From Octopus sinensis (Eukaryota): a stretch of 64,000 nt of DNA. The DNA lies in NCBI RefSeq assembly GCF_006345805.1, contig NC_043020.1, positions 21,762,001-21,826,000 of the forward strand, written 5' to 3'. Shown here piece by piece: positions 8,647-35,939 of the stretch (position 1 is its first letter; each line of letters opens with the position of its first letter). The notes under the pieces are model-generated. The model saw nothing but the letters and a program-made list of their open reading frames with translations. It was not told where the DNA came from and made no database searches. Made by a program: the position numbers and the translations under genes.

Positions 8647-8739
8647 ATACACCTTGATTCCTTCTGAATTTAATTTCTCTGTTGAATATGTTGGTTCACA
8701 TACTCTAACCACATCTTTGGCACCACGAGATTTTAGTTC
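8647..8739 (-). CDS. PTP4A1: PRL/PTP4A phosphatase, second coding exon (ELKSRGAKDVVRVCEPTYSTEKLNSEGIKVY)
   Basis: 93-nt phase-0 exon with acceptor TTTTTATGCTGCAG and donor GTAAGT. Matches human PRL-1 ELKKYGVTTIVRVCEATY..EGIHVL, including the regulatory Cys in RVCE. Confidence 0.95.
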
Positions 8740-13457: not shown

Positions 13458-13568
13458 TTCAATGAATTTATCCAAGGTCCCATCTGTTGGCCGGTCCATT
13501 ATCAGAAACCTCATATGTTTATGAGAAATTTCAGCAGGTTCAGGCTTTATGGCCCTTGTAGCTCTCAT
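13458..13568 (-). CDS. PTP4A1: PRL/PTP4A phosphatase, first coding segment (MRATRAIKPEPAEISHKHMRFLIMDRPTDGTLDKFIE)
   Basis: Matches the PRL N-terminus (P.P.E..YK.M.FLI...P...L.KFIE). 37 codons followed by donor GTAAGA, joining in frame to 8739. Confidence 0.95.
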
Positions 13569-14067
13569 GGTAATTTATTGTTTGGTCGATGTATGGAATT
13601 GACAATAAGAAAAATTAATTAGAGCAAACAGCTCTGCAATCCTGCCAAAATGGTGGTTACTGAAAGAAATCCACCACAAAAATTGGCAGATCAGTAAGAG
13701 CACCTGTTTTTGGTTTCTAAGCACCTAGTAGCGGTTAAGGATCGTCAGTTGGATACGCTCCCCAGCTAGCTGCTGTCTAGCTGTACATCAACTTTAGTTA
13801 TCCAGTAAAACGAGAGAAGAGTGAGTACGTTGAAAGCACAAGCTATCGCCATCCAAAAACTCTTCTATCACAAACACTTCAACAGCAAACTTTACGTGAT
13901 GGAAGGCGCAACAGATTCAAAACTGTCTCCAGTTGTTTTAGAAGTTTACTTGTTTTCACTTCAATTGAAACACAGCACTAACACCACTATTACACGTGTT
14001 GCGCCTGGCAGAAATCTCCACTGTTGGTCACAAACTCCATAAATGTATGACCGAATTCACCAAAGAA
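13569..14067 (-). promoter_or_regulatory. Probable 5' UTR portion of the PRL start-codon exon, with uORFs
   Basis: Strong acceptor TTTTATTTTTTACAG ending at 14068. Non-repetitive and CpG-retaining. Contains exactly three upstream ATGs (14040, 13852, 13788). A second possible acceptor TTTCTTTCAG ends at 13660. Confidence 0.6.
13766..13852 (-). CDS. Candidate peptide uORF MAIACAFNVLTLLSFYWITKVDVQLDSS in the PRL leader
   Basis: ATG(G) at 13852, open for 28 codons to TAG at 13768-13766, ending ~200 nt upstream of the main ATG. Confidence 0.6.
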   Translation of the reverse strand: MAIACAFNVLTLLSFYWITKVDVQLDSS

Positions 14068-15189
14068 CTGTAAAAAATAAAATTCCACATATAATTTTTT
14101 TCTCTCCAATTTTAAACAAACATATTTACAGTTAAAAAATAGGAAACTTTACAGAAAATGTGGAAGGAAGAAATTTATTGAAGAAAGATTAGTAGAAATA
14201 GTCATGCATTCCATCCTGTGAAGTACAAAAATTAGTATCAGTAAGACACCAATACTAATTCAGTGAACTGAATCCTTTCCCTGAAAATAAAACAGAGCCT
14301 TGTCAATTAAGAAATAATTAAAAAAAAAGATCAATTTTGTTTTATAAATTTGAAATAATAGCTATAACTTCCACATTATATTTAAAAATAGAATTACAAA
14401 AATTCTCATTGTTGGAATGTGAAACAACAAGTATACATTGTTTTAACTAAGAGCTTACCCAACAATTGTGTTTTAGATTCCATATGGCTATAATTTGGCT
14501 ACTGTTTGGTATTTAGAAGATAACAAGTAAGTAGCAAGATAGATTAGGATACAAAGAACTGAGTCAGTCTAGTAGATGCATCTTGTAAGAAAGATAATAT
14601 CAAAAGAAGTTTGAAAAGTAATATTTTAGGTTTGGTCATTCACCTGTCAGATAATAAACAACCAGAGATCATCTTAGTTCTATGATACAATTCTACTTTT
14701 TGCTGTATCTCAGGAGTGGTGGTCAAGAATCTTGCAAACCAAATATTTTAATATTCCAAATTCCAGCATTATAATTTATTAATTATTGTAGTAACCTTCC
14801 AAAATATTTTAAAAGTTAAATATATGGACAATAATGGTCATAAAAGGGGCTTGGTTTTAGGAGCAAAATGAGTCCGATTTTCCAAGTATCTGCAAAGATT
14901 ACTAAATTTTTTGGAAGGTAATTCAAATTCTACTACACAAAGTTCATTTGTAATTTCACTATTTACTCAATTTGGTCACCTTGAAAGCAAAATTTATGAC
15001 AACCATATCTGGAAAACTTCAACAAAATGGAAAGAAAAAACTTGAATATAGACGCACACACACTACATATTAACATTCCTTTTCCAATATTTTTCTTTTA
15101 ATTAAATTTTATTCAAACTACTATTTCTTAACTACATTATATATGCTATCAGGTGAATGAAGAATGACTGTTTCTCACAAATTTTTGTG

Positions 15190-15960
15190 AGAATATATAT
15201 AATATATTTTTAGAGAATATATTATAAATTAACATTGGAATGTTCTTGGCAAACATGGATATTATGGGTTTTCCTGTCTTTTTTGGGGCCACACAAAGAA
15301 CATCTTCCTCTTTGCTTTGGCTGAAGAATCTCAAACGAGGTTGACAACCATCTTTTCTTGTTTGAGTAATGTTAGCAGAACTAGAAGATTGTTTGTCATG
15401 TTCTTGTTTAGCATTAACTCCAGCAAGTTCCTTTCCTAACTGAATTAGGTAATTAGGCACTGTCGTCTTTTATCCTTGAAACTTTGCAAGTGAAGCTGTT
15501 TAGCAACAAGGAAAGCAATCACTGCACGTATATCAATCATGTTGTAGAATATAACCATAGGCCATCTTCAAGTCATTTTTTTGCAAGTGTATGTCCTTAC
15601 CATCTTATCTAGGGTATCTACTTCTATTGGTTTGTTGTAACATGCAATAACTTCAGGTTTCTTTTCAGCACTTTTTAAAATCAATTGAAGGCTGAGAGTG
15701 CATTGTACTCATAAGTGTGACTACATAATTTTTCCTACAACAAATAAGGTAGGATCATGGAATCCTTTTGAAATCCAAATATTGTGCTGTTGATTTCTCT
15801 TTCTTTTCCATTTGTGAAAGCACTTGTAAGTTCTACTCTGTTCTTTCTAATTGTTCCAACTGAAGTAGTTTTCTTGCAAAGCAGCTTTCGAGTCAATCCT
15901 AGACTTGTAAAAAAAATTATCACAATTAGTTCACGCATATCCTTAACCGCCACATATTCA
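15190..15960 (-). mobile_element. Decayed piggyBac-like transposase C-terminal fragment
   Basis: FFTSLGL..VGTIRKNR..NSTIFGFQ; KPEVIACYNK..VDTLDKMVRTYTCKK..RWPMVIFYNMID; Cys-rich tail RGRCSLCGPKKDRKT. Confidence 0.85.
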
Positions 15961-16469
15961 TTTATTCAAGTTTATCACACAGTCACTTATTTCTCTAATT
16001 TTGTCATAGATTGGCTGACCGAAAACTAAGATTTTTCAATTCTATTTCACTATTATCGACATTTATGTTTCGTTGAATTATGCTACCCAAAACCCAAAAG
16101 AATATTTTTCTCCCTCGTGTTCTGACCACCCTAACTCTGGCATCCTTCCTCTCTGTCTGTCTCTCTCACTTTTGATTACCATCTGCTTTGCCCAAGACTT
16201 CCACAGACCACAACCACTTCACCCTATATAAACTAGCGCACGCACTCGGATTGCCCTACTCGATTCTTAATACCTCCACCAAAAGAATACGTATCCAGAA
16301 GATGCTCTCGTCTAAATTTGATAGTTCGTCATCCCCACCCCTACTTAGAGTTTATCTCCTATGTAAGGTAGTGATCATATAGTGCATAAATTTGATGGTG
16401 TAGTGTATGCAGGTTGAATTGAAAGCTATTGTTTGTTTATGAATTCTGCCAAATGCGAGTTTTCTTTTC

Positions 16470-19400
16470 AGGTACATAACGCTGCTGTCCCCCGTCACAT
16501 GGGCCCACACTTCCCACACCCTCAGAGTTGGCACTGTCAAAGGTAGGCCTGGTGAGACTGTGGAGATGCTTTAACGGAAATGTGTTGATTTGTGCTGCCT
16601 CCAAGAAGCAAGGTGGAGAGGAGGTTCTGCAATGTTCCTCACAGGCAAAGAACACAGGTATACTTCTTGTGGAGAAATGGGTTGATAAGGTAATCGAGGT
16701 AGTCAGAGTATGCGACAGAATACTTAAAATAAGATTAGTGCTTCATCATGGGTTAGCAACCATTATCTCGGCCTATGCCCCTCAGCTGAGGTGACCTGAT
16801 GGACAGAAAGACTGATTTTATGACACTTTCTTGCAGACTACCCCGTTGACAAATGACAGGGACTTTCTCCGTATGGCTAGTGACTTCAATGGAAATGTTG
16901 GACAACATATAGGTGACTTCCATGGCGTAATTCGAGGCTACAGTTTTGGTTCCCGCAATGAGGAGGGAACCAGGTTGTTGGAGTTCTGCGATGCAAATGA
17001 TCTTATGGTTTGCAATACTAACTTCAGGAAACCTGACAGTCACCTACCGTTCTAGCAGACACACTCGCCAGAAAAAGGGAAAGATGGCTGCTTATAAATG
17101 CCAAAACCTTCCCACGCGAAGAATGTACCCCACAACATAGACTGGTAGTTAGAGACTTCAGGATCCGGGCTAAATGGATGCCCAAACGGCGACCAGCATG
17201 GAGGAGAAGGGTCTGGAAGCTTAAAAATCCTGCGAATGGACAGAAATTTAGAGACATTACTCGAAGGCTTTGACGAAATAGAAGGGGATATAGCTTCACG
17301 TGATCTGGAAGACAACTGGAGGTTTCTACGGGACAACCTGCTGAAGGCCACTAACCAGATCTGTGGATGGTGCAAAGTCCCCTCTCGACTCAAAATAACG
17401 TTGTGGTGGAACAATGTTGTTGACAGAGCTATTAGAGAAGAGAAACAGGCTTGGAAGGACTGGAAGAACAGTGGTAGCAGGGAATTGTATCAGACTGCCA
17501 GAAGGGAAGCTAGGAGGCAGGATTATTTAGCCAGAGGGGAAGCAGATAAGAAAAAATTTGCCAATGTTCTGTGCTCTGAGGACCAAAGACTTGAGGTATT
17601 TCGTGTTGCAAGACAGTGTGTGAGAGAGAATCATGATCTCGTAGGAGAGAAATGTATCCACATGGATGATGGTTCACTTGCACTAAACGAGGCTGCAAAG
17701 AGTGAGGTTTGGAGATGCCACTATGAAAGATGGCACAATAAAGAGAATGAATGGGAGATGAGAGTCTGCCGAATGTTGACCCAGCTATCTAAATTGACAG
17801 TACATTGGCAGATAAAGCAATTAAGAGTATGAAGACACGGAAAGCCCCCGGCCCGTCAGGAATCACTGCAGAGATGTTCAAAACATCCGGCGGTGTTGGC
17901 TATAGCCTAGTCACCTGTATAGTTAACCAGGTGATACACAAAGGAGTCATTCCCAATGACTGGTGTAGCAGCACCATAGTCAATTGCTACAAAGGTAAAG
18001 GTGATAATTTAGATACAAATAATTACAGAGGTATCAAGTTGTTGGATCAGGTAATGAAGGTCACGGAGAAGGTCATAGCCCAACTAATTAGGGAGAGAGT
18101 CAGTTTAGATGAGATGCAGTTTGGGTTTGTGCCAGTGAAATTCAAGACAGGATGCCCCTGGGAGCTCCTCTATGCTGATGACCTAATTGATGCTATATTT
18201 TTTGTAAGACAGCTGCAGGAGAAATACCTAGTGAAAGATAAACCTCTGTACCTGGCTTTCATTGACATGAAAAAAGCCTTTGACAGGGTCCCCTAATCCC
18301 TTATATGGTGGTCAATGAGGAAACTAAAGATAGATGAATGGTTAGTGAGAGCTGTGCAAGCCATGTACAAGGGATGCTGTCAGTAAGGTGAGGATTGGCA
18401 ACGAGTACAGTGAAGAATTCCGGGTAGAGGTAGGTGTCCACCAAGGTTCAGTCCTCAGCCCCCTCCTATTTATCATAGTCCTCCAGGCAATAACAGAGGA
18501 ATTCAAGACAGGATGCCCCTGGGAGCTCCTCTATGCTGATGACCTAATTGCTGAGAACTAGAAGTTTCAAGTGTGGAAACAAGGATTAGAATCAAAGGGC
18601 CTTAGAGTCAACCTAGCTAAAACCAAAGTCCTAATAAGTAGGAAGGCAGACAAACCACAAATCCCTTCAGGTGGATGGCCTTGCTTGATCTGTAGAAAAG
18701 GCGTAGGTAGAAACTCTATAAGATGTACCCAGTGTAAGCTATGGACACATAAGAGGTGCAGCAATATCAAAGGAAGGCTAACTAGGAAGATAGTTTTTGT
18801 ATGTGGCAGATGCTCAGGAGCAATAAACACAGAAAATGTGCAGAGAACAACTTCTGCCACATTCCAGGGAGAAAAACTACAAGCAGTTGACAGCTTCCAT
18901 TACCTAGGTGACCAAGTTAGTAAGTGGGAGTAGGTGCACTGAAAGTGTAACTGCTAGAATGAGAATAGCCTGGACAAAGTTCATAGAGCTCTTACCTCTG
19001 CTGGTGACAAAGGGCCTCTCGCTCAGAGTAAAATGTAGACTGTCTGACACGTGTATGAACAGCCATGCTACATGGCAGTGAAACATGGGCCGTGACTGCT
19101 GAAGACATCAGTAAGCTTGCAAGGAATGAAGCTAGTATGCTCCGCTGGATGTGTAATGTCAGTGTGCATACTTGACAGAGTGTAAGTACCTTGAGAGGAA
19201 AGTTGGACCTAAGAAGCATCAGATGTGGTGTGCAAGAGAGACGACTGTGCTGGTATGGTCATGTGGTGAGAATGGATGAGGATAGCTGTGTGAAAAAGTG
19301 CCACACCCTAGCGGTTGAGGAAATCTGTGGAAGAGGTAGGCCCAGGAAGACCTGGGATGAGGTGGTGAAGCACGACCTTTGGACATTAGACCTCACCTAG

Positions 19401-19968
19401 GCAATGACTAGTGACTGAGACCTTTGGAAATATGCTGTGCTTGAGAAGACCTGGCAAGCCAAGTGAGACAATATCCCGTGGCCTATGCCAGGGGTGTAAC
19501 CAGCCCACTTATGCGTACCTTTCCTTCATTGGACACTAAACTGCTTGTGAAGACTTGTTGAGGCAAATGAAATCGAAATCAAATTCGATGACTGGCATCC
19601 GTGCTAGTGGAGTGCTAAGAGCATCATCCAAGCGTGATCGTTGCCAGAGCAGCGGACTGGCTTCCGTACTGGTGGCATATAAAAAGCACCATTTGAGCGT
19701 GATCATTACCAGCATCGCCTTACTGGCACATGAAAAATTATTCGAACGAGGTTGTTGCCAGTGCCGCTGGACTGGCTCCTCTGCAGGTGGCACGTAAAAG
19801 CACCCACTACACTCTTGGGGTGGTTGGCGTTAAGAAGGGTATCCAGCTGTAGAAAATCTGCCAGATCAGATTGGAGCCTGGTGCATCCATCTGGTTTGCC
19901 AGTCTTCAGTCAAACCGTCCAACCCATGCCAGCATGGAAAGAGGACGTTAAACGATGATGATGATGAT
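16470..19968 (+). mobile_element. RTE-clade LINE (APE endonuclease, RT, Cys-rich insert) with 3' UTR and (GAT)n tail; inactive
   Basis: Endonuclease (ISAYAPQ, DFNGNVG), RT (KAPGPSGI, NYRGIKLL, QFGF, KAFDRVP, LLYADDL), WPCLICRKGVGRNSIRCTQCKLWTHKRC, RRLCWYGHVVRM..RGRPRKTW. Many frameshifts. Ends GTTAAACGATGATGATGATGAT. Confidence 0.92.
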
Positions 19969-22874
19969 ACTATAATGGAAAAAGTTGCTTATTAAGTAGG
20001 TGTGTGACAATTACTATAATTACTAAAAGACAGCAATATTAAAAGCTTGACTGTCTGGAAATCATCATCATCATCATCATTTAGCGTCCGTTTTCCATGC
20101 TAGCATGGGTTGGACGGTTCTACTTGAAGAAATTGCCTATAAAGACCCATGTAATTTACATAAGTGATTTTCAGGATAAAATTTGTTAAAAAAATGCTTC
20201 TACTCATTTAAAATTTGCACCTAAAAGTTTTCAGAAATACCAATATGGCGAGGGGGAAAAGTTTTCAATTTAGTTGTATTTAGCATAATTTCACTTATGA
20301 TTAGATTTTATAAAATTTTCATTAAATAAAATTAATTTCTGTTTAACAGGTATCACATTGAAAGCTATTAAATTACAAAGTGTTTGTGTTGTTTATCATA
20401 AACTTTATATTACATTTCTTGCCCACAAGAGATTATGCCATATGTCTTCTCAAATCCTGATCACAGGAAAAGTTGTTGATATGAATTACCAACAAAAAGC
20501 TGATAAATAAACACAGGTATTGCAAATTAAGTCTAATTACCAATAAACATCAGCTTGGATGACACTTTACTCAACTGACAGAGGAAGGTGACTGGTCAAA
20601 CTGATTATGTTGTTTTTGAAAATATGCTTCCTTTGGTACATTAGTCAAGAACTGTGGCTAATCTCTAAAATACATCTTTGCAATTTATCTTGGAATTCCA
20701 CCAACATGTTTCTTGACGTGTAGAAGCTTTGCTTCAATAACAAATTTGTACTGCTCAGCTGGCTTCAAGTGTTAAATGTCATCAAGTGTTAAATGTCATA
20801 TGGCACAGAATGTTGTTTACGTCAGTGGACGTAATTAATTGGTTGAAATTGCCGAAATGCAAGAAATTAAAGATGAAATATGTTACAAACTACAGAATTT
20901 TCTCAAGAAAGCCAAGATAAAATGATGTTTTATAAACACATTCTACTAGTATACGAAGTTTAAAATTTTTTATTTACCTAGAAATTATGTTAAAAACTGC
21001 CGTTCAAACTGAAAAGATCCCAGCAGGTGCTACTTGGCAATTTCAACACCAGAGTGGGAGCAGATCACAACCCCTGGCAAGAGTGTCAATATGGGGTTGG
21101 CAACATGAATGAAAATGGGCAATGGCTGCTTGAGCTCTGCATGCTCCATGGACTATGTGCCACGAACACCTACTTCCAAGCCAAAGCTAGAAATTTGCAG
21201 AGGAACTGTTGATTATGTCAACTTCAATACATAACTGGTGCTTTATTGAAAGAATGAATGACAAAGTTGACCAAGCCACAACATGAACTTGTTAAAATAA
21301 CAATACATGTCAATAATCTGTTTTATGGCATCCAACTATTTTATATTACATTCTTTATGGAGGATACACCAATGGGAGAGGTATGCTGGAAGAAAGTTTA
21401 AGAACAAAGCTGCAGCAACCCTTCTCAGCAATTGAAAGGGTTTCATGAGTACTCTTACTGGTAATTCTGAGCATCTATTGTTTAAAATCCTGTCAACCTG
21501 TCTCAAATTCCACTACACCATTTGCATAACTATTGGGTACACTAAATAGAGTTCTTAAGTACTCTATATCTGCATACTAAGTATGGTCACTTACCTTTGG
21601 TATTCATGACACAGGCAAGTGCTACTTCAATCGATAGATTAATAAAGATAAATATTTGCAATCACTTGTGCTAACTCAAGATTCAGAATAAAAAACAAAA
21701 AATCTCACTTTCTACTATATGAATGGGAAGTGGCAACTATCTGAATAAGTTTAATTAAAACCTGTGAGTTTCAACTAATGAATACAAGCTGTTACAGAAA
21801 CATTAAAATATTAGAACAATTTACATTTGTAACTCGAGCAATTATTTTCAAAGGTATTCCTTCAGCTAATCATTCTCTTGAAATGAGAAAGAACCCATTA
21901 TCAACCAGTGAAAATAATGTTGAAATCTGTACAGTGTCTAAAGAAACAAGAGTGTTCATAAAGATGAACTGATGATTGCTCACAAAAAGTTATGTAATTT
22001 CACTTCACAGTTAGCTACAATACATATGTTAATTCCAGCAAAAGTAGACCAAGGAAGACTATCAATGAAGTACACCGTCTCAGAAAACTAAGCTTTACAA
22101 AAAGTCACACACAAAATATCACACTCTCCTTCCCACAATCCACTGACCAAGCCTTTGTATGATCTTCTTGTACTGTGAGAGTTTGCTCTGACACCCTATC
22201 ACTACCGTCTTTATCTTCTTCCCAGCTACAAGAACTCCCTCATGTGGGGATAGGCATGCATCTCCTCTGTAGTAAGACACCTGTATTGCCCCTTTACCAT
22301 ACTTTAGCTTTTCAACACCTGTATAACACCCACCCCACCTCTCATTTAGTCATGGGGGCTTTTCCCCCTATTCCATTTGTTTTTGAATGATGATTTAACA
22401 AGAACATGGCAATTTAACAAAGAAATTGATATAATCTATTAACCAAATCAGTGCATAATTTGTAAATCATCAACATTCAATGTCCGTTTTCCATGCTGAC
22501 ATGGGTTGGACAGCTTGACAAGGACTGCACCAGATTCCACAGTTTGTTCTAGCTTGGTTTCTATGGCTGGCTGCCCTTCCTAACACCAGCCACTACAGAA
22601 TGTACTGGGTGTTTTTCATGTGGCACCTTGGTTTTAAGATTTCAATTCTGTTATGGTGGATATATCTCAAGTACAGCAATGTGCCACATATCTCAGCCTC
22701 TGTCATCTCCGTCCCTTTTCTTCCTGGGTTTTCCCACTTCTACAACTTCTTTCCACTTTAAGTAGTTGGAACTTCTTTATGCAACTATCCCTATCACATG
22801 ACCAAACCAGCAGTCTCCTCTCTTGCATACTGCATATAATTCTGTACAACTTCCTCTACTGATAATTAGGTTAT

Positions 22875-23080
22875 CTCATCATCATCATCATCATCATTTA
22901 GCGTCCGTTTTCCATGCTAGCATGGATTGGACGGTTCTACTGGGGTCTGTGAAGCCAGAAGGCTTCATCAGGCCCAGTCAAATCTGGCAGTGTTTCTACG
23001 GCTGGATGCCCTTCCTAACGCCAACCACTCCGTGAGTGTAGTGGGTGCTTTTTACGTGCCACCCGCACTGGTGCCAGACA
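22875..23080 (-). mobile_element. SINE or LINE tail sharing the RTE 3' end (related copies near 10590-10770, 20060-20125, 22470-22630, 38420-38700, 40730-40900)
   Basis: (CAT)n followed by TTAGCGTCCGTTTTCCATGCTAGCATGG, the reverse complement of the 19900-19968 tail. Confidence 0.75.
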
Positions 23081-23119
23081 GAGGTAGCAAAAATTATCTA
23101 CAGCTTCCAGAGAGCCACC

Positions 23120-24430
23120 AGGACATTTAAGAAAATCAGTTTCCTGTGTATCTGTGGTCATTATGGCTCCCATACATCTTCCACATACAAACACTACTTT
23201 CTATAAACCTTCCTACTATTCCACTGCACTTCTTGCATGACCATAGCTTGCACTAGGTAGACTGAATGAAATTTCTGCCTACACCCTACCTACATATCGA
23301 GTAGGGTCATTTACTGGAAGGGTGAAGGTTCCTGTCTAACTTTTTGCTTACTAGGACCTTGGTCTTTAAGTTTACTTCAAGACCCTTTGATTCCAAGTTA
23401 AGTTTCCATACCTGGAATTTCTTTTCTGATTCTGTGATGGCACATCAGCATATAGTAGTTCCCATGGGCTTCCAGTCTTAAATTCCTGTTACAACTTAGA
23501 GGATGATGAATAGGAGGAGGCTGAGGCCTGACCTTTGATGAACATCTCCTCGTGTACTAAATCCATCACTGTACCCATGATCAACTCTTACCTTTCTAAA
23601 AGCACTCCTGTACATGGCCTGTACCATTTCCACAAGCCATTCATCTATCCCTAGCTTCCTTAGAGATCACTATAGAGTGAGGCACTCAGTTGAAAATTTT
23701 CTCTAGATCAACAAATGCCAAGTTCAACAGCCTGTTTTTAGATAAATTCTTTTCTTGCAGTTGCCTGACTATGAATATAACATTTGTGGTGCTTCTCCCC
23801 AAGACAAAGCCAAATTGCATTTCATCCTGTCAAATTCTGTTCCTAATTAATTGGAAACCTTCTTTGCAACTTTCATCACCTGGTCCAGAAATCTGAAGCC
23901 TCTATAATTACTTCTGTCTAAAGCATCTCTCTTACCCTTGTAGCAGCTATGATGTGGTTGCACCAGTCACTAAGGATTACACTTTCCTGAATAACCTGAT
24001 TAACTATGCAGGTGACTGGACTGTATTCAACTCTACTAGATATCTTAAGCATCTTGGCAGTGACTCCTAATCAATCAGAGGCCTTCCCCGTCTTCATATC
24101 TATAATTGCCTTATCTATTATGCTGCTGCCAACTAGGATAGCTTCTGTTGGGTTCATATGAGGAAGATTCTTTCTCCCATTCATTAGTCTTTTATAGTAG
24201 CTCTTCCACACCTCTTTTCAAGATCACTAAAAGCAAGCATATAATTATCTGTTTGTACACACTTCTCACTCACATCTTGATTCTCTATAACACACTGTCT
24301 GGCAATTCAGTCTGATCTTCATTCTGTAAGACATTAGCAACCCCCTTCCTTTCTACTTCTACCCTAGTTAGATAAGCCTCACACCTAGCTTCTCTTTCAG
24401 CTATCTGATATGGTTCTTTGCTACCTTGGA
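23120..24430 (-). mobile_element. Decayed RTE-type LINE fragment
   Basis: Reverse-complement similarity to 17500-18700 (RT region, GIDEWLVE..QAMY-like and LAFVDLEK-like motifs). Confidence 0.7.
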
Positions 24431-24685
24431 CAGCTGGAATAACAAAAGTCAACTTTTGCTGTATTTGAAATCTGAATAACTAGACACGGAATTATATAAA
24501 CCCGCTCAACATAGACTCCCTGTTTAGATTAGCCCACTACTAACACAAATTGAAAATGATAAGAAGGTGGGCTGAAATGTTCATAGGCCAAAAATGGGGT
24601 GGTATAGTGAAGCTATTTGTCAAATCGATGTATTCCTGCATGCCAAGAGGTTAAACAGAACAAGAAATGGACAAACTAATTAATA

Positions 24686-25037
24686 GGCACAGGAGTGGCT
24701 GTGTGGGAAGTAGTTTGCTTACCAACCACATGGTTCTTGGGCAAGTGTCTTGTACAATAGCCTTGGACCGACTAAAGCCTTGTCAGTGGATTTGGTAGAC
24801 GGAAACTGAAAGAAGACCATCGCATGTGTGTGTGTGTGTGTATGTATGTATATGTTTGTTTGTCCCAACAAAATCGCTTGGCAACTGAAGCTAGTGTATT
24901 TATGTCCCCATAATTTTGTAGTTCGGCAAAGAGACCAATACAATAAGTACTAGGCTTACAAAAAATAAGTCCTGGGGTCAATTTGCTCGACTAAAGGAGG
25001 TGCTCCAGCAAGGTCACAGTCAAATGATTGAAACAAA
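24686..25037 (+). mobile_element. tRNA-derived SINE
   Basis: GGCACAGGAGTGGCTGTGTGG head, central (TG)n and tail CAGTCAAATGATTGAAACA. Similar to 48612-48968. Confidence 0.85.
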
Positions 25038-26099
25038 TATTTCTATGAAAAAAAGGAAAAAAAAAAAAACTAAATTAAACCTCAAGTTTTCTAGAGCTTA
25101 AAATTAGCATGGAATCATACTGAGAATGTTGTTTATTTCCTCACACTGCTTTAAGAAAGTGGTGAACACTGGCTGAATTTTACATAGTAGATATTCTTGT
25201 ACATGTAAATTTCATTTTTCTTCAAGAAATATTGGTCAAATTTTACAAATAAAAATATTGCACAATGAATATTATTTTGTAGACTTAATGCCAGATGTGA
25301 CTACTTTTTTTAAAAATTTTGAATACAGTTGAACAATTTGTGGTAATGTTTGCATATTCATTTTGGTTTTGCTCTCTCTCCTACTAATGAGTTTGCTGTA
25401 TGTTAGATATTTTTAAAGCCTTTAATTTATGCTTTTAATGCTAACGAAAGGAATTAGTTTGCACATTGTTTTTTAATATAGATCTACATGCAATTCTGAG
25501 AAGGGTACCTGATAGTTGTGGGATGTACGAAAAACACCAGCTAAATTTCCCTAAAATCACACCTTTAGGTTTGAAAATATTTTTGAAACACAATTGTTTT
25601 TGTTTTTACTGAAAAGGTTCTGCCCATTGTTTTAAGTGTGTAGTGTAAAAAAGAAAACAAAATTTGACCAAAAAGTTGAAAACATCCCCACTAAAATGTA
25701 GAATATCCAACTTATGTGAGTGTTCTGATCTGAAACTATCATTTATAGCCATTTCTAATGGTCCTTTGAAATTTTATTGAAATATCAGATCTCAAAATCT
25801 CAGGATTTATTTAGTTCTATACCAACCAAAAATGTACCAGAACTCAAATCCCTGTGGATTTAGTTAGGCTGAAAACACTGCGAAATTGATACCAAAGACA
25901 CTTTCAATTTCTGTAATGTGAAGATGGTTATCACCCCAGTTTCAAAGATGTCACCACAAATATGGTTAATAATTCGCTTATGCCAATCAAGCAACATTTT
26001 AACCAATTCACTGATCATTCAAATTGTCATATTTCCTCAAATATTCATCCAAATTTCACAAATGAAGTATCAAAGTGTTTCTTTTTGGATGCTCTCCAA

Positions 26100-27122
26100 G
26101 AAAAAATTCAGTAGAAATTACAATTAAACATTTTTTGAAATTCAGTGATACCTACTGGCTTCTCTCGAAAATGGACAAAATTTGGCATTGTTGTGTTATT
26201 AAGTACCTGCAGAAAAAGGGTTTAGCCCCCAAGGACATGCTGATATCATTGCTACATTAGAGGATGATGCTCCAGCTTTGTCAACAATGCCAAAAATGGG
26301 CAGTTGACCCAAGGTCTGGACATCCTGCAAGTGCCACCGCCAAGGAAAACTTGCACAATAGCCTTGGACCGACCAAAGACCATGAGAGAGTTGACAATTC
26401 TCTGCACAATGAACTTGACAACAAAGGTTTCTACTGAATGAGTGTCAGGTCTTCTGACACCTGATCACATTATGAGAAAATCTGACATTGCTTGAGGTAG
26501 ATCTGGTTTCCTCTAACATTTCAAAGCCAGGATGAATGTTGGGTTCATGATAGAGCCAGAAACAAAGAGACAATCCATGCAGTAGAAACACCCCTCCTCA
26601 ACCGCTCCAAAGAAGGCCAAGGTTATTTCATCTGCAGGGAAGGAGAAGGCCTCAGGTTTTTTGGAATGCAAAAAGCACTGTATTTATTGACTATTTTTAA
26701 AAGGGTCACACCATCAATGGTGAATACTGTGCCAATTTGCAGAGGTAATTACAAAAGGCAATGAAGACCAAACGCCCAGCAAAAACTGACCTTTGTTTCA
26801 ATAGCTGTGTATGTGACTGTGGCTTTGAACTGGTTGTTCACCGTCCCTATTCTTTTGATTTAGCTCCATCTGACTCATCTCTTCCTCAACATAAAAAGAC
26901 ACTTAGCTGGGTATCTGTATTGCAGTGATGATGCTGCCATATCTGCAGTTGATGACTTTTGTGACCAATAGCGTGAAAGCTTTTTTACCAATGAGATCCA
27001 AGCACTGCAACACCAAATGAAGTATGTGGATCGCAAAGGGTACTGTGTTGAAAATAAACTTCATTTAGTAACATTCCATGAGAGTATCTTGGTCAGTCTA
27101 TTAACTTTTCAGCAGACCTTCA
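26100..27122 (+). mobile_element. Decayed mariner transposon
   Basis: MDKIWH..VIKYLQKKGLAPKD start, QDE.WV..EPETKRQSMQ and HRPYSFDLAPSD motifs. Confidence 0.8.
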
Positions 27123-28268
27123 TAGAAGTTTTAGCTTTTTTACATCTTTAAAAATGAATTTTATGATAAAAAAGTGTTAAAGTTTTAAAAGTATTTGAAT
27201 GTAAATGGATAAAAGTATATACAGTTGTAAGAAGGGTGGATCTTTCTAGAATAAAATTGGCAGGTTTGATGTTTCAGTCCTATAGCTTCAAGAAGCCATA
27301 AGTCAATTTTAATGTGGCACTGACAATATATTTCTATCAGTTTCAAAGATAACTTTTGATGCAAATACAGAAAGATCTAATAGATTTCATAGGCATCAAC
27401 AAATACCCTCATTACTCATTTTATAACTTTTTAAAATGCCAACTCAATCTTAAAGAAAAAGTAATACATATACAAATATCTGTCTGTCTCTCTCTCTCTG
27501 CCTGTGTGGGTGTGTGTGTGCGTGCGTGCACGCACACATACATGTAAATTTCTAAATTATAATGAAATTCTATTTTCTTCAGAAACAAAATTTCTTAGAA
27601 TCAGCATTTCCAAGAGAATAATTGATTGGAGAAAAAAATTGTGTACACACCTTAATTGATCTGCAAAGATGGTGAGGCCATGCTAGTGTAGAGGGGCTGT
27701 CTGTCTTTTCGACAATACCTCCCAGCAAATCCTGTTGAGTAGGAGGGAGTAAAAATTTGCACTTTAAACTTGTCAGATGTTAAATTCTGAACAATGTTAA
27801 TTCTCATTTTTAAATTCTTAGGTACAAACATCAATACAACCTAAAACATAGATACCAAAGTATTTAATAAAATATCTTTAACAGCATCATACACTATAAT
27901 GCTTTTCAAACAAGTAGATAATGAAATCAAACATTTAAAAATGCAGACACTGCCCCACACTTTTTTTTATATATTTTGAAATTTAACATTCAAGGATAAA
28001 TTTTAAATCACATATTGAACTTTAAATATTCACTCATACAAAGTAATGCTTTATTCCTTTAATTGTTTTTGTAAAGTTAAAAGTCACCAATATATATGCA
28101 GATTTTAATAGTCTCTTCTTGAATTTTCACTATTTAGAATTAAAAAAAGGATTAAATCTGTCACCGCACCAAAAGTTCAGAAATTGCAAGCATTGTCTTC
28201 AGTGTTGCTTTTTGCTTTTGTATTTTTAAAGTAAACTAAAGTTCAGAAAAGCATGAAACATTACTTAA

Positions 28269-29335
28269 CCCTTTCGTTACTATATTTCTGACCAAAATAC
28301 ACCCCTTATGTGTTTCAATTAATTTCTAACATAATCATAAATTTAGTCTGGTTTCATTAAACAACTATAACTTTTTTATTTATCAATATATTAACGTGAA
28401 TTTTGGAAGATAATTTAATGAAATGTTCTCAACCAATTCTATACTATAATTTTTGTCACAAAGTGACTCTAATTGCAGGTAGATACAGGTAAATTCAACA
28501 AAATATAAAATTATAAAAATTTTGTTCAAACATCGCTATAGAAAATGGGTTATTAGCTAATATTCAATTGGGTATACAACAAAATTTTACGATAGAATTT
28601 GTTATTCTGGGTAACTTTCTGATACCCATAATAATATTTATGGCAAAATAGTCTTAATTTCATTTAAGGTTATGGGAAACCACTAACTATCCTTTCTTTC
28701 CTTTTGTTTACATTTAGCGTAACGGTTCGTTTCCGCCGTAATGATTTCAAATAGGCTCATTCGAAAAAGTAAATAGAAATAGTCTAAGGCTTTACTCTCC
28801 TGGGAAAGACTGTGGCTTGGTCCAGTTTCTTCAGAAAAATCACCGAAAGAAACAGTTTTTAAATTTTCACTCCATTCAGGTGCCAATTCATTTTCTTTAT
28901 CGCTGTCGGAGCTCTCGGATTCACTGTTTTCACTTTCGGAAAATGAAACATCAGATTCATTATCAAATACCACATGCTTTTTTTTTTCAGTCATAGAGTT
29001 AGATTTATGAAGGTCTTCAGTAGAATATCCTTCGAATTCTGACTCGCTGCTTGATATAATGAAATTCGTATCCATTTTTTGTCAGAATTACAAATTTTGA
29101 AAACACAATAGGAACAAATTTTGGAAAAAAATCTTCCAAAATTCACGGAATTAAAATTACACTTCGATTTTTGTACAAAACTGTAGTTGAACTCTTTACG
29201 AAGTATAATACGTATTTTCACGAATATACTAAAGAGATTTGCTCTGATATTCTCATTTAAATATGAATAGGTAAATTCGGGCGGCTTTGGTCACATTAAC
29301 CAAAAATTTTTTCGGGCGGTTTCGTAACAAAAGGG
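28269..29335 (-). mobile_element. Non-autonomous piggyBac deletion derivative
   Basis: TTAA target duplications (28265-28268, 29336-29339) and TIRs CCCTTT(C/T)GTTAC. ORF 28683-29075 is an acidic PGBD-like N-terminus ending ALDYFYLLF...IITAETNRYA. Confidence 0.88.
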
Positions 29336-31260
29336 TTAATGTTGAAATTTACTAATTTATCAAGCACAGATTACAAAAGATAGAGGGGGACAAGGTAACT
29401 ATCCTTATTAGACTCACAAGAATAATGGTTAAATAATTTAAGGGGATGATATAGTGAATGCAATGTGCAAAGAAAATTGGAATTTCCTCTCAGTTTGAGA
29501 GAGAAAGCAATTATTAGCAACTTTCAAATAAAAGAGAAAGTAATTTGAAGAAATAAAGGATCTTTCAAAGCCAGTCATGTCACCATCCTTAGCTATTGCT
29601 TGTGCTTCTTTTCCATCTCATGGTTTCCTTGACTTCACCTGTTTCACTTAACTTATCCTTACCATTCCTACTGACTTATGCATGCAACCCTTCTTTCCAC
29701 ACACTCCCAAATCCACATACTAGGCTGGTACCTTCCCCCCAGCCCTTCTCCTTCCCTCAACTTGTAACTATCCTTGCACACTCAATTACTTTTCCATTTC
29801 ATCATCTCCAAGTTACACCTCACCTCCATTCCTCTTCCAACTTCACATACATTGCCCTTCTTCCTTACCCATACTCCCTCTACCTCTTCTCCTACTCCTG
29901 TCTTTCCTATGCTGCAGCTGTCCTTGTTCTGCCAATATTCACCCACTTCCCCTCCAAACTTATCACTCCAAAGCTGAGCATCCCCTTCTTAGTAGGTATC
30001 TGCAATTCATACAACTATCACTATCACCCATGAGTTTTAGACCCAAGCTGTGGTCAAATGTTTTTTGCTCTGCATAAAACTGAGTGCCTATTTTAATGGT
30101 ACATTTCTGGCTCTGAATGTCACTGACTAGTTCATCGACCTGGACCACCAACTATCACATAGGATGCAAGCCCAGGCCATCGAACCTAATTATCAATACC
30201 TATTGCCATGCCGTAGACAGCTTAAATTTCCTGAAGCTTTCACAATTCATTAACACTGTCTCCCAGACTGAGCTCTGCTCCCTTCAAATGCTATGATGAT
30301 ATCCTCATCAAACCAATGGACAAGAATGTGTCCTGATGTGGCAGGCAGGAAGGCCTCTACAAACTAAAATACTGTGACAACTCAGGACTATTGCCTTTTG
30401 CTTTCAGAACACCCCTTCCCACTACTAACAACATCCCTCCTTCACCATCTGTCTTCACTAACACTTCCTCCTTTTACCCTCAGCAGCATCCAACTTCATT
30501 CTCCACACTTCAACCATATACTTCCTCTCCACAATCCATAAACCTGACAAATCTGGCCATCCTGTTGTGTCCTTACTTACCTTTGTGCCCTAGGTTACTG
30601 CTCACTATTCTTACATTCACACACTTTATTCCCCCTTCCTCTACACCAGCATTCCTTAACCAGGGTTCCTAAGGGTTTCGCAAGAAAGAGTGAGAGAAGC
30701 CAATGCTAATTTCATGATCATAATATTACTATATACATCAGTGGTTCCCAACTGATTTTTGGCCATGCCCCACCGAATCGTTTCTAAAATTCTGATGCCC
30801 CCTTGTGATATTTAAGTTTTGTTATTCAAAATTTGGTTAATGTTTATCATATTACCCAAAAACAAAAAATATATAGTGTAACAAATGTAAAAATTGTGTA
30901 GGAAACGAATATGAAAACAAAAAGGGGAAAGCAATAGCAGTGGGAAGAACTTTGGAAAATTCACAAGATCTGAGTTTTTCCCTCATAACTTTTAGGAAAA
31001 TTTTTTTTTTTTAAATGAAATTTTATATAAAATACCTTTCGACTGGCATAGATTATGATTATGAAGAAATTTGTGGGAAAATATTTTCCAGGGTGTAGGG
31101 AGAGGACTTCGGAAAATTCACAAGATCTGAGTTTTTTTCCCATAACTTGGTGACAGTTTATCATGGATAGCGGGTATAAATCTAAAATTTAAATATTCCT
31201 CTGAGTATTGACAAACTATTGCACTACTTGTTTTATGTATTTTTGAATTCGCATAACTAC

Positions 31261-32381
31261 AAATTTCGGATCTTTTCCTTTTGATGGACGGATTTTTCTA
31301 GTTAAATAAACAATTTGAAACTTCATATACTGGTAGAATGTGTCAAAAGAAAATATTATTGTAAACAAAATTGTAATTTGTAAGTTTAATGTAGTTTAAT
31401 TCTTCGAATTTTAAACAATGAAATGCCAGCATTTGAGCTCAAATCATTTGCTGCGTCTAAAAACTCAGACAATATCCTCTTGCAACGTAAACAGCACACA
31501 CACACACGTGTTATTCATCCTTCTCTCTTCTGTCTGTTTGATAAACAAAGGCGGAAGGAGGAGGCATATGCTAGAAATAACAGCTATATCTCTTAAATTG
31601 ATGAATTTCGTCGCCCAATAAAAATATTAACGATATTTTTTTAATATTTTCTTTATTTTTTTTTACTGAAAAGGCTTCTCTCGTGGTTTTGAAGGGCCAG
31701 AAACAACAAAAACAAAACAATAATATGCCTAAATCGGTCTAGAGGGTGCGCGTGGAGTGTGGGTCGCATTGTAAAAATTTGCGAAATATTTTTTCATAAA
31801 AGGATGCCCCAGCTTGTCGGAGGCTGTGATATAAATTGGGAAAAAAATCCTCGACACCAGTGCGTAATTGGTACTTAATTTATCGACCCCGAAACGATGT
31901 AAATTTGTGTAAATTTGTTGCAGCAAGGGGCAAAACACAGAGGGGACAAAGCATGAGATACAAAAGTATTAAGTCGATTCTATCGACACCAGTGCGAACT
32001 CATGAACGTGTATGTATGCTTTTGTGCATACGCTTATATATCAATTACTATGTGCTTGTGCAAATGTATATGCATGTGTTTGAGAGAGAGAGAGAGAGAG
32101 AGAGAGAGTGAGTGACAGAGAGAGTGTGTGTGTGTGTGTGTGTATGCAGCGTGCGTCTGCTATGTTTGTTTATCAATATCGACAACACAGCAAATGATTT
32201 GAGCTCAAATGCTGGCATTTCGTTGGTTAAAAATTCGAAGAATTAAACTACGTAAAACTTACAAATTACAATTTTGTTTACAATATTGTTTTCTTTTGAC
32301 ACATTCTACCAGTATACGAAGTTTCAAACTGTTTAGTTAACTAGAAAATTCCGTTCATCAAAAGGAAAAGATCCCAAATTT
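31261..32381. mobile_element. MITE with ~190-bp TIRs (GGATCTTT family) enclosing a SINE fragment and GA/GT microsatellites
   Basis: Arms 31261-31453 and 32188-32381 are reverse complements. Confidence 0.85.
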
Positions 32382-32392
32382 CTGCGCCCCTG

Positions 32393-35300: not shown

Positions 35301-35939
35301 CAAATTGTCTATATTTGTTTTATTTTCTCTATTTTGTGCATCCGTAGATTCCTATCCCTCCCACACACACACGTAATTAAAAAAGTTCAAACATGGAATT
35401 ATTCCATTCAATATCATGTTTATTATAGAGATTATATAACAAATTATGCTTTACACTTCTATATTTAACTGTGCATGTATATTCCTTATTTTTGTTTCTG
35501 GTGTCGGAAAGACACCCTGCCCCCTCCCCCATTTTCTCGCAATTAATTGATTTTTAAAATTTTTTTATTTTTTGCAAAAAACCCATGTTTTTGGATACAG
35601 AGATTCTGGAAAACTGCCAAAAATTGGTATTTTGAAATTGCTCACCTCCCCTTAAATTTCCCCCACCCCCCATATCTTCATTTTCCACTTTCCCCCATAA
35701 CTCTAACCCTAAGTACAAAAAATTTTTTTCAGAATCATAATCTTTGTATTTTCCCGCATATTTTGAAACAAAATTTCTGTAAAAAGTTAAAAGTTAAAAA
35801 TGAAGGATGGTGGGGTGCCAATTTCTTTTGCAGATTCGTATTCTCTGTAGCCAGAAAGGTTTTGTGTTAAAAAAAAAAAAAGAAAGACAATTTCATTAAA
35901 AAATATCCATTTTTCTGAAAGTTATGATCATCAAAAGTG
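32393..35939. mobile_element. TIR DNA element whose left TIR is split by a Helitron
   Basis: GATGATCATAACTTTCAGAAAAATGGATA plus TTTTTAATGAAATTGTC (after 35051) is the reverse complement of 35886-35932. Confidence 0.75.
32428..35051 (+). mobile_element. Helitron, internally deleted, with a decayed PIF1-type helicase
   Basis: 5' A|TC and 3' hairpin CCCGGGCAATGCCGAG followed by CTAG|T. Helicase motifs FFLDAARGTGKSF, LLPGGRMAHSAFKLPL, GGVTLLLSGDFQQILPV, LRLRVGCPIMLIRNL. Confidence 0.92.

What the first reader, a model, noticed from the sequence alone, without database searches (positions are those of the whole stretch)
13766..13852. Candidate conserved peptide uORF in the PRL leader: a possible invertebrate Mg2+-sensing translational switch
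Seen: ATG GCG ... TAG encodes MAIACAFNVLTLLSFYWITKVDVQLDSS and ends ~200 nt before the PRL start. It sits in a non-repetitive block with roughly ten CpGs in 400 bp, against very few in the next 900 bp of intron. Established: mammalian PRL-1/2 (PTP4A1/2) regulate Mg2+ homeostasis through CNNM transporters, and their translation is controlled by a conserved Mg2+-sensitive uORF that stalls ribosomes. Inference: this is the orthologous element, which would extend the uORF-PRL-CNNM circuit to molluscs. I cannot verify peptide similarity to the vertebrate uORF from the sequence alone.
Basis: partly seen in the sequence, partly recalled or inferred. Interest (0 to 1): 0.8.

Follow-up and report, generated by a model that had tools for sequence, protein, structure and literature searches.

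The report
Wrong uORF flagged; true PRL uORF nearby
The flagged 28-codon reading frame is real but is not the counterpart of the vertebrate magnesium-sensing element; that counterpart is a different, ancient and already catalogued upstream reading frame lying just upstream in the same PRL leader and split by a 41-kb intron.

Summary
The ORF exists exactly as described, on the minus strand (13852..13766, MAIACAFNVLTLLSFYWITKVDVQLDSS*). It ends 197 nt before the PRL start codon (13568). An ORF of this length arises in 53% of shuffles. It has no similarity to the vertebrate PTP4A1/2 uORF peptide. It recurs in only one close relative and is absent from five other mollusc or invertebrate sequence sets, two fish and a coral.

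The genuine orthologue is a different uORF, here called uORF-A: MCRNIL|FFGEFGHTFMEFVTNSGDFCQAQHV*. Its first six codons lie in exon 1 (55444..55427, in a CpG island). The rest opens exon 2 (14067..13990), 138 nt upstream of the flagged ORF. It is 65% identical to the mammalian uORF peptide (E 4e-13). Differences from other species are mostly synonymous for every invertebrate compared and about half for the two fish. The intron follows codon 6 in the scallop and the shark too.

This family is already published as ESUCA group HG0001 (PRL-1/PTP4A). By my reading of a garbled table header, it is recorded in fly, vertebrates, Lophotrochozoa and Cnidaria. The window therefore adds a new member of a known kind.

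The flagged ORF (uORF-B) is at most a lineage-restricted second uORF that may dampen reinitiation. Magnesium sensing in invertebrates remains untested.

The parts
13766..13852 (-). uORF-B, the flagged ORF: MAIACAFNVLTLLSFYWITKVDVQLDSS*. Start context ttttggATGg. It is a second uORF, restricted to this lineage, and is not the PTP4A uORF orthologue.
   Evidence: Searches show the ORF. It recurs only in the close relative L003-L005 as MAIICAFNQFIFLPYWKSPVDVQLDSGRIGRQPDC*. There is no alignment to the mammalian uORF.
13990..14067 (-). Exon 2 part of uORF-A: FFGEFGHTFMEFVTNSGDFCQAQHV*, with stop TAA at 13992-13990. This is the true orthologue of the vertebrate PTP4A1/2 conserved-peptide uORF.
   Evidence: It is 95% identical to the relative, against 43% in the adjacent intron. 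Homologues are found in scallop, other invertebrates, zebrafish, shark, mammals, lamprey and an octocoral.
55427..55444 (-). Exon 1 part of uORF-A: ATG TGC AGA AAT ATT CTG (MCRNIL), followed by the donor GTAAGT at 55426-55421. Start context cgatcaATGt.
   Evidence: The pattern ATGWSYMGNAAYATHYTNGTRAGT has one hit in the window and none in 100 shuffles. The scallop has CGATCAATGTGTAGAAATATACTG|GTAAGTAT. The joined exons translate to MCRNILFFGEFGHTFMEFVTNSGDFCQAQHV*.
14068..55426 (-). Intron 1 (about 41.4 kb). It splits uORF-A after codon 6 in phase 0. The acceptor is ttttttacAG at 14069-14068. The intron is full of transposon ORFs.
   Evidence: Conservation with the relative starts exactly after the AG. 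The shark has the same intron position (MSKHIP|QFCG...), as does the scallop. Octocoral exon 2 also begins just after an AG acceptor (tttctAG|), but no upstream octocoral exon was identified. Transposon ORFs are listed.
55200..55800 (-). CpG island and likely PRL promoter with the 5' end of exon 1. It contains CACGTG (55637-55632) and a palindromic CRE, TGACGTCA (55617-55610). The transcription start site is not determined.
   Evidence: The CpG observed/expected ratio is 1.2-1.45. The sequence is shown.
13458..13568 (-). Start of the PRL main ORF in exon 2: MRATRAIKPEPAEISHKHMRFLIMDRPTDGTLDKFIE. The donor GT is at 13457-13456.
   Evidence: tblastn with human PTP4A1 gives 53% identity. Against the relative, pS is 0.50 and pN/pS is 0.09.
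8647..8739 (-). Next PRL coding exon: ELKSRGAKDVVRVCEPTYSTEKLNSEGIKVY, followed by the donor GTAAGT. The rest of the gene lies beyond the start of the window.
   Evidence: The exon end was placed by analogy with the spliced mollusc transcripts P0001/L006.
13777..13788 (-). A mini uORF of three codons (MYS*) lying out of frame inside uORF-B.

Best explanation
The window holds the 5' part of a PRL (PTP4A-type) phosphatase gene on the minus strand. Its leader carries two uORFs. uORF-A is MCRNIL|FFGEFGHTFMEFVTNSGDFCQAQHV* (55444..55427 joined to 14067..13990). It is the orthologue of the vertebrate PTP4A1/2 conserved-peptide uORF, which in human cells represses PRL translation in a way that depends on peptide sequence and on Mg2+. 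By homology, uORF-A is the element most likely to hold ribosomes on the leader when Mg2+ is plentiful and to release translation of PRL when Mg2+ falls. That step is inferred, not shown. The flagged ORF, uORF-B (13852..13766), lies 138 nt after the uORF-A stop and 197 nt before the PRL ATG. It is a second uORF restricted to this lineage. Ribosomes that resume scanning after uORF-A, or that leak past it, would meet its AUG. If translated, it would lower and perhaps tune reinitiation at the PRL start. I put the chance that selection maintains it at about 50%. It is not the Mg2+-sensing orthologue.
For: Shown for uORF-A. (1) BLASTP of uORF-A against the mammalian 44-aa uORF protein P0129 gives 65% identity, E 4e-13. 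The profile search returns 48 proteins carrying the ...GHTFMEF..SGDYCQAQH... motif (three of those fetched depart from it slightly). They come from mammals, birds, reptiles, amphibians, fish, lamprey, a scallop and unnamed invertebrate contigs. (2) Over the 19-codon core, differences from the window run as follows: close relative 3 synonymous and 0 nonsynonymous; scallop 4 and 1; other molluscs or invertebrates 6-8 and 1-4. In the two shifted frames nearly all the same changes are nonsynonymous. (3) Gene structure is shared. Six codons precede a GTAAGT donor, and the remainder starts directly after an AG acceptor, in the window, the scallop and the shark. (4) The human PTP4A1 CPuORF used as the sequence-dependent positive control by Takahashi et al. 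reads ...MSKHIPQFCGVLGHTFMEFLKGSGDYCQAQHDLYADK*. This ties the motif to the element of Hardy et al. 2019 as cited in PMC7530721 and PMC11855589.

Shown for uORF-B. No alignment to P0129. It is present only in L003-L005, with a conserved ATG and context, a 3-nt in-frame indel, and five synonymous and no nonsynonymous changes in the C-terminal VDVQLDS. Identity is 0.74, against 0.65 and 0.54 in the flanking spacers. The simulated probability of neutral retention is 0.015-0.06.
Against: There is no transcript from the window's own species. The exon 1-exon 2 junction, and the continuity of exon 2 from 14067 to 13458, rest on conservation and splice signals only. Mg2+ sensitivity has been shown only in human cells. 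The distance from the conserved CQAQH to the stop varies among species (1, 2, 6 and 7 codons). That fits poorly with a simple stall at termination. One mollusc transcript (L011) lacks the MCRNIL-type first exon, so the start codon used may differ among species.

For uORF-B, the stop is not conserved: the relative's ORF runs 8 codons further. Overall pN/pS is 0.49, against 0.71-0.73 in the other frames, from only 20 substitutions. The Kozak -3 position is U. An ORF of this length is expected by chance. Only one species pair is available.
Confidence: 0.85

Rival explanations
1. One reading: the flagged ORF (13852..13766) is itself the orthologue of the vertebrate Mg2+-sensitive PTP4A1/2 uORF.
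For: It lies in the PRL leader on the correct strand, about 200 nt before the start codon. Its ATG and frame are kept in one relative.
Against: There is no BLASTP alignment to the mammalian uORF peptide. There is no tblastn hit in the scallop, three other mollusc or invertebrate sequence sets, zebrafish, shark or octocoral leaders. A different ORF in the same leader is clearly homologous.
Confidence: 0.02
2. The flagged ORF is a chance ORF with no selected function. Its partial conservation in the relative only reflects general constraint on the PRL leader, or the short evolutionary distance.
For: ORFs of at least 28 codons occur in 53% of shuffles. The stop is not conserved. The middle of the peptide has diverged. 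pN/pS is 0.49 and is not distinguishable from the off-frame controls given 20 changes. It is absent outside one clade.
Against: The two species differ at 50% of synonymous sites in the PRL exon, and their introns cannot be aligned. Even so, the ATG, its 13-nt context and the frame are kept, the frame through a 3-nt indel. The last seven shared codons carry 5 synonymous and 0 nonsynonymous changes. The neutral retention estimate is 0.015-0.06.
Confidence: 0.45
3. The conserved block at 14067-13990 is constrained as DNA or RNA, for example through the CACGTG E-box at its 3' end or through an RNA structure, and not as a translated peptide.
For: It contains CACGTG. Its nucleotide identity is high enough for blastn to detect it even in fish.
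Against: For every invertebrate compared, substitutions fall mostly on synonymous sites of one frame, whereas in the other frames they are nearly all nonsynonymous; for zebrafish and shark about half are synonymous. CACGTG is lost in the scallop, L012, the two fish and the coral, while CQAQH is kept. There is no Rfam match. The leader does not fold better than shuffles, z = -0.8. Human frameshift mutants derepress the reporter (PMC7530721).
Confidence: 0.03
4. uORF-A encodes a stable microprotein that acts in trans, and is not, or not only, a cis-acting stalling peptide.
For: GENCODE annotated the PTP4A2 uORF as protein-coding on its evolutionary profile, and HLA-presented peptides confirm that it is synthesised (PMC13275300). 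NCBI annotates 'LOC128125822 homolog' proteins across vertebrates. The distance from the conserved core to the stop varies, which is atypical for stalling at termination. The invariant His, Cys, His, Asp and Glu residues could bind a metal (inference).
Against: Reporter work in human cells shows cis repression that depends on the peptide sequence. Nothing here tests an action in trans.
Confidence: 0.2

Closest known systems
PTP4A1/PTP4A2 (PRL-1/2) magnesium-sensitive conserved-peptide uORF (Hardy et al. 2019, PNAS 116:2925). Also known as human LOC128125822, GENCODE c1riboseqorf55, and ESUCA family HG0001, which includes Drosophila PRL-1.
   Same: uORF-A has the same host gene and the same position in the leader. 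It shares the peptide core (G-H-T-F-M-E-F-x-x-x-S-G-D-F/Y-C-Q-A-Q-H). It shares the intron after codon 6 with the shark, and shows purifying selection on the peptide.
   Different: uORF-A is shorter, at 31 codons against 37-44. It ends one codon after CQAQH, where vertebrates have the DLYADK tail. Its Mg2+ response is untested in any invertebrate. The flagged uORF-B shares only the host gene and the leader location. It has no sequence relationship to this family.
Leaders with several uORFs that work by reinitiation (GCN4, ATF4 type)
   Same: Two successive short uORFs precede the main ORF. The spacers of 138 nt and 197 nt are long enough for reinitiation. Human PTP4A1 mRNA is among those resistant to eIF2 inhibition (PMC4383229).
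   Different: uORF-B does not overlap the main ORF, unlike ATF4 uORF2. There is no evidence here for dependence on eIF2. This is an analogy only.
Metabolite-sensing uORFs that act through the nascent peptide or the uORF (AMD1 MAGDIS, fungal arginine attenuator peptide, TRPM7 Mg2+-sensitive uORFs)
   Same: A short conserved peptide in a leader, whose sequence rather than its mere presence represses the main ORF in response to a small ligand or ion (from PMC11855589, and from general knowledge).
   Different: The peptides are unrelated in sequence. In those systems the stall site sits at a fixed distance from the stop, whereas the tail after CQAQH varies here.

Membership tests
PTP4A/PRL conserved-peptide uORF (HG0001; Hardy 2019 element), tested for the flagged ORF uORF-B | Lies in the 5' leader of a PRL/PTP4A gene, on the same strand, upstream of the main ATG | tested here: met
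   13852..13766, minus strand, 197 nt before the PRL ATG at 13568.
PTP4A/PRL conserved-peptide uORF (HG0001; Hardy 2019 element), tested for the flagged ORF uORF-B | Peptide homologous to the family core GHTFMEFxxxSGD(F/Y)CQAQH | tested here: not met
   BLASTP against the mammalian uORF protein P0129 finds no alignment with E <= 100. The motif is absent from the peptide.
PTP4A/PRL conserved-peptide uORF (HG0001; Hardy 2019 element), tested for the flagged ORF uORF-B | Conserved across distant animals carrying the same gene | tested here: not met
   tblastn hits only the close relative L003-L005. There is nothing in L006/L011, L010, L012, scallop L013, L014, zebrafish, shark or octocoral.
PTP4A/PRL conserved-peptide uORF (HG0001; Hardy 2019 element), tested for uORF-A (55444..55427 joined to 14067..13990) | Peptide homologous to the family core | tested here: met
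   65% identity to P0129, E 4e-13. The profile search recovers vertebrate 'LOC128125822 homolog' proteins. The human PTP4A1 CPuORF sequence is given.
PTP4A/PRL conserved-peptide uORF (HG0001; Hardy 2019 element), tested for uORF-A (55444..55427 joined to 14067..13990) | Purifying selection on the encoded peptide (low Ka/Ks) | tested here: met
   For the invertebrates, 3-8 synonymous against 0-4 nonsynonymous differences over 19 codons, with pN 0-0.085 and pS 0.30-0.80 (zebrafish and shark are less skewed: 4.5 synonymous against 5.5-6.5 nonsynonymous, pN 0.12-0.14, pS 0.43-0.44). The off-frame controls are nearly all nonsynonymous. The published median Ka/Ks for HG0001 is 0.06-0.24.
PTP4A/PRL conserved-peptide uORF (HG0001; Hardy 2019 element), tested for uORF-A (55444..55427 joined to 14067..13990) | uORF split by an intron after about codon 6, with the second part opening the exon that also carries the main ATG | tested here: met
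   Shark exon 1 is ATGAGTAAGCACATCCCT|GTAAGT, and its exon 2 starts cag|CAGTTCTGTGG. The scallop and the window have the same arrangement. I derived this feature here; I did not take it from a published definition.
PTP4A/PRL conserved-peptide uORF (HG0001; Hardy 2019 element), tested for uORF-A (55444..55427 joined to 14067..13990) | Present in the mature mRNA and translated | not testable with these tools
   No transcript or ribosome-profiling data for the window's species could be reached. Spliced transcripts from other invertebrates (L010, L011) carry the uORF in their leaders.
PTP4A/PRL conserved-peptide uORF (HG0001; Hardy 2019 element), tested for uORF-A (55444..55427 joined to 14067..13990) | Represses the main ORF in a way that depends on peptide sequence and on Mg2+ | not testable with these tools
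   This has been shown only for the human leaders (PMC11855589; PMC7530721; PMC10083557).

The most novel reading that the evidence does not exclude
In this cephalopod-like lineage the ancestral Mg2+-responsive PRL uORF has been joined by a second uORF (the flagged ORF). This second uORF is lineage-specific, and its C-terminal peptide (VDVQLDS) is under selection. PRL translation would then integrate two inputs. One is stalling on uORF-A. The other is the efficiency of reinitiation past uORF-B.
Probability: 0.15. Interest if true: 0.4.

Novelty: new member of a known kind. Interest (0 to 1): 0.25.

Why it matters
The PRL-CNNM-TRPM7 axis is a main controller of cellular magnesium in vertebrates, and the PRL leader uORF is its translational sensor. 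This work places the orthologous uORF precisely in an invertebrate genome, split across a 41-kb intron at the position seen in the scallop and the shark. That gives a correct target for annotation and for reporter or ribosome-profiling tests of whether Mg2+ sensing by this peptide is ancestral to animals. It also warns against assigning orthology to a uORF by position alone: the flagged ORF sits in the right leader but is unrelated. The gain is modest, because the wide conservation of the family is already published.

Tried and rejected
1. Hardy et al. 2019 (PMC6386685 and its DOI) is not held. I recovered the human uORF sequence from Supplementary Figure S6 of the ESUCA preprint instead.
2. 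A full-text search for the peptide strings found nothing. A search for the SRA run accessions of the related contigs also found nothing. The species of the window and of loci L003-L006, L010-L012 and L014 therefore remain unnamed, and I could not verify 'cephalopod' directly. A mollusc origin is supported by the identity of the MCRNIL exon and its donor to the scallop's.
3. A look-up of the plus-strand 73-aa ORF antisense to the region (13821-14042) found nothing on record and no Pfam hit.
4. My first search for exon 1, using the regex MS[KRQ][HNQSK][IVL], gave one false candidate at 20207 with no donor. A donor-anchored scan then found 55444.
5. The first exon 2 coordinate was off by one, and the join gave MCRNILVLW*. 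This was corrected to 14067.
I padded it with the genomic read-through.
7. Rfam found nothing for 13000-14600.
8. The RNA fold of the leader is unremarkable, z = -0.8.
9. I considered candidate splice sites inside exon 2 that would remove uORF-B: CAC|GTAAAG at about 13895 and tttctttcag at about 13661. I rejected them. The donor is absent in the relative, and the acceptor lies in a window-specific 22-nt insertion.
10. No full-length PRL protein closely matching the window (i.e. from a close relative) turned up in the protein searches, so no spliced transcript from a close relative could be fetched.

Full report
**Observation.** The ORF is at the stated coordinates, on the minus strand: 13852..13766, ATG start, 28 codons, MAIACAFNVLTLLSFYWITKVDVQLDSS*.
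- The PRL start is on the same strand at 13568 (MRATRAIKPEPAEISHKHMRFLIMDRPTDGTLDKFIE|gtaag). It is 53% identical to human PTP4A1 over this exon. The next coding exon is at 8739..8647. The rest of the gene runs off the low end of the window.
- The spacer between the ORF's stop and the main ATG is 197 nt.
- The CpG statement holds on one side. There are 10 CpG in 13652-14051, 1 in 14101-15000 and 7 in 12560-13457.
- The ORF is not unusual as an ORF. A closed ATG ORF of at least 28 codons appears in 53% of dinucleotide shuffles of the 422-nt stretch.

**What the surrounding sequence is.**
- Logan contigs from a related species (L003-L005) carry PRL exon 1 at 89% amino-acid identity. They align with the window from a sharp boundary. 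Upstream of 'polypyrimidine-AG|TTCTTTGG' identity is 43%, which is unalignable. Downstream of it identity is 95% for 78 nt. It is then 65%, 74% (the flagged ORF), 54%, and 86% in the coding part.
- The boundary is a 3' splice site, with AG at 14069-14068.
- The 78 nt read FFGEFGHTFMEFVTNSGDFCQAQHV* in one frame.

**Relatives of that frame.** The same frame recurs, with mostly synonymous differences, in:
- a spliced mollusc transcript (L006/L011...FGHTYMEFVTNSGDYCQAQHV*);
- an invertebrate transcript (L010: MSRNILFFGEFGHTFMEFLCNSGDYCQAQHV*);
- two further invertebrate genomic contigs (L012, L014);
- the scallop Mizuhopecten (L013);
- zebrafish ptp4a1 transcripts (MSKHIPQFCGVLGHTFMEFLKGSGDYCQAQHGVYAEK*);
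- a shark PTP4A1 locus;
- an octocoral, about 160 nt upstream of its PRL gene, just after an AG acceptor (LFGFRSRFQKFMEYFLKDSGEFCQAQHE*).

A profile search returned 48 proteins with the motif (three of those fetched depart from it slightly). They include the 44-aa mammalian MIRPQSSMSRHIPQFCGVLGHTFMEFLKGSGDYCQAQHDLYADK, which NCBI names 'uncharacterized LOC128125822 homolog'. LOC128125822 sits beside PTP4A1 at 6q12 (PMC10959942).

**The first exon.**
- In the shark the uORF begins in exon 1 (ATG AGT AAG CAC ATC CCT|GTAAGT) and continues after an acceptor (cag|CAG TTC TGT GGT...).
- A donor-anchored scan of the window found one matching short exon: cgatcaATG TGC AGA AAT ATT CTG|gtaagtat at 55444..55427, inside a CpG island.
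- The degenerate pattern has one hit in the window and none in 100 shuffles.
- The scallop has CGATCAATGTGTAGAAATATACTG|GTAAGTAT, encoding the identical MCRNIL.
- Joining 55427 to 14067 gives MCRNILFFGEFGHTFMEFVTNSGDFCQAQHV*, 31 codons. I call this uORF-A.
- Intron 1 is about 41.4 kb, against about 34.5 kb in the scallop. It falls after codon 6 in phase 0, as in the scallop and the shark.
- Just upstream of exon 1 lie CACGTG and a perfect CRE (TGACGTCA), as expected of a promoter.

**Selection on uORF-A.** Counts are over the 19-codon core, each compared with the window.

| Compared with | Synonymous | Nonsynonymous |
|---|---|---|
| Close relative (L003) | 3 | 0 |
| Scallop | 4 | 1 |
| L012 | 6 | 1 |
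| L014 | 7 | 2 |
| L011 | 8 | 2 |
| L010 | 6 | 4 |
| Zebrafish | 4.5 | 5.5 |
| Shark | 4.5 | 6.5 |

- In the two other frames the same substitutions are almost all nonsynonymous.
- The constraint is therefore on the peptide. It is not on the E-box at the ORF's end, nor on an RNA fold. There is no Rfam hit, and the leader fold has z = -0.8.
- BLASTP of uORF-A against the mammalian uORF protein gives 65% identity, E 4e-13.

**Link to the known element.**
- The ESUCA paper used 'the PTP4A1 CPuORF' as its sequence-dependent positive control, citing Hardy et al. 2019 (PMC7530721).
- Its Supplementary Figure S6 prints that ORF as ...MSKHIPQFCGVLGHTFMEFLKGSGDYCQAQHDLYADK*.
- The frameshift mutant that derepresses the reporter changes the residues after FMEF.
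- Reviews describe the element as a Mg2+-sensitive uORF whose coding sequence matters (PMC11855589; PMC10083557).
- uORF-A is therefore the orthologue of that element.

**The flagged ORF (uORF-B).**
- It has no alignment to the mammalian uORF.
- It has no tblastn match in any locus except L003-L005.
- In that relative the ATG and its context (GTTTTTGGATGGCGATA) are kept. A 3-nt indel preserves the frame. The peptide there is MAIICAFNQFIFLPYWKSPVDVQLDSGRIGRQPDC*. That is 63% identity, and the stop is displaced by 8 codons.
- pN/pS is 0.49, against 0.71-0.73 in the off-frames, from only 20 changes. The last seven shared codons (VDVQLDS) carry 5 synonymous and 0 nonsynonymous changes.
- The two species differ at half of the synonymous sites of the PRL exon (pS 0.50, pN/pS 0.09). 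A simple neutral simulation retains the ATG, an open frame and an in-frame indel with probability 0.015-0.06.
- Conclusion: it is possibly maintained within this lineage, but the evidence comes from a single species pair.

**Mechanism.**
- Shown: the leader has uORF-A with a weak start context (tcaATGt, and likewise tcaATGa in L010, zebrafish and shark). A 138-nt spacer follows, then uORF-B (ttggATGg) containing a 3-codon mini uORF, then 197 nt, then the main ATG in a strong context (accATGa).
- Inferred: uORF-A acts as in human cells, holding ribosomes when Mg2+ is plentiful. Ribosomes that terminate and resume scanning, or that leak past uORF-A, can initiate at uORF-B. That would lower reinitiation at the PRL start.
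- The tail after CQAQH varies among species (V*, AL*, FPREE*, E*, DLYADK*). This argues that any stall is not tied to termination. It also leaves room for a microprotein that acts in trans. GENCODE treats the PTP4A2 uORF as protein-coding (PMC13275300).

**Novelty.**
- ESUCA Table S1 lists family HG0001 as D. melanogaster PRL-1, zebrafish ptp4a1/2/3, chicken and human PTP4A1/2. Median Ka/Ks is 0.06-0.24, and an earlier report by Crowe et al. is cited.
- HG numbers were assigned so that the most widely conserved families come first.
- Table S2 gives, for human PTP4A1, counts of 0|9|0|13|0|9|22|2|0|6|20|... across 19 categories. The header was garbled. I read the order as Metazoa-other, Cnidaria, Bilateria-other, Lophotrochozoa, Ecdysozoa-other, Arthropoda-other, Insecta, and so on. 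That order fits the insect-only families in the same table.
- On that reading, conservation in Lophotrochozoa and Cnidaria is already on record. My scallop and octocoral results agree with it.
- Three things are added here: the exact placement in this genome, the shared intron position, and the correction of which ORF is the orthologue.
- I found no paper testing Mg2+ sensitivity outside vertebrates.

**Limits.**
- The species of the window, and of most Logan and ENA contigs, could not be named.
- There are no transcripts for the window's species.
- Only one relative is informative for uORF-B.
- Hardy et al. 2019 could not be read.

Noticed in passing
window 55468-55482 (minus strand); L013 about 5962-5976: A small inverted repeat, TCGCT-gtaga-AGCGA, lies about 25 nt upstream of the uORF-A start codon. 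The scallop has TCGCT-gaaag-AGCGA at the same place, with the stem kept and the loop changed. This may be a conserved hairpin in exon 1.
   Followed up: no
L011:1-180 and L006:430-680: A fully spliced mollusc PRL transcript carries the conserved core (FGHTYMEFVTNSGDYCQAQHV*) but has no MCRNIL/MSRNIL-type first exon. Its only in-frame upstream ATG is about 50 codons away. The start codon of the uORF may therefore differ among molluscs. The internal Met of FMEF is invariant, even in the coral.
   Followed up: partly
window 16000-20000 (plus strand), 28683-29075 (minus strand), 4316-7641 (minus strand): Long, GC-richer ORFs lie inside the PRL introns; by eye they look transposon-derived: reverse-transcriptase-like ORFs in intron 1, a piggyBac-like N-terminal ORF in intron 1, and a LINE/RT-like set in intron 2. 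None was searched against any database.
   Followed up: no
window about 53400-53520: A run of N, presumably an assembly gap, flanked by TA/CATA microsatellite. It shows as runs of X in the ORF translations. It lies about 2 kb downstream of PRL exon 1, inside intron 1.
   Followed up: no
window 48800-50700: A very long (TATG/CATA)n-type microsatellite with GC of 0.16-0.22 and strong skew. It produces spurious ORFs of 450-600 codons on both strands.
   Followed up: no
window 14000-14009 and 13903-13912 (minus strand): The 3' end of uORF-A (GGCGCAACA) is perfectly complementary to TGTTGCGCC about 90 nt downstream, and the two pair in the predicted fold. The downstream arm is not conserved in the relative (GCAGAGCC), so this is probably fortuitous.
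   Followed up: partly
L012:102-191: In one unnamed invertebrate contig the uORF continues past CQAQH as FPREE* instead of V*. No PRL start codon was noted in the remaining 1 kb (not searched). The uORF exon and the coding exon may be separated by an intron in that species.
   Followed up: no
P0089 (Chiloscyllium punctatum chiPu_0007315); P0152 (Mizuhopecten KP79_PYT23837): Public gene models have absorbed the uORF. The shark model fuses it in frame to PTP4A1 as an N-terminal extension. The scallop model calls it a separate 67-aa hypothetical protein with an extra middle exon. Both look like annotation artefacts.
   Followed up: partly
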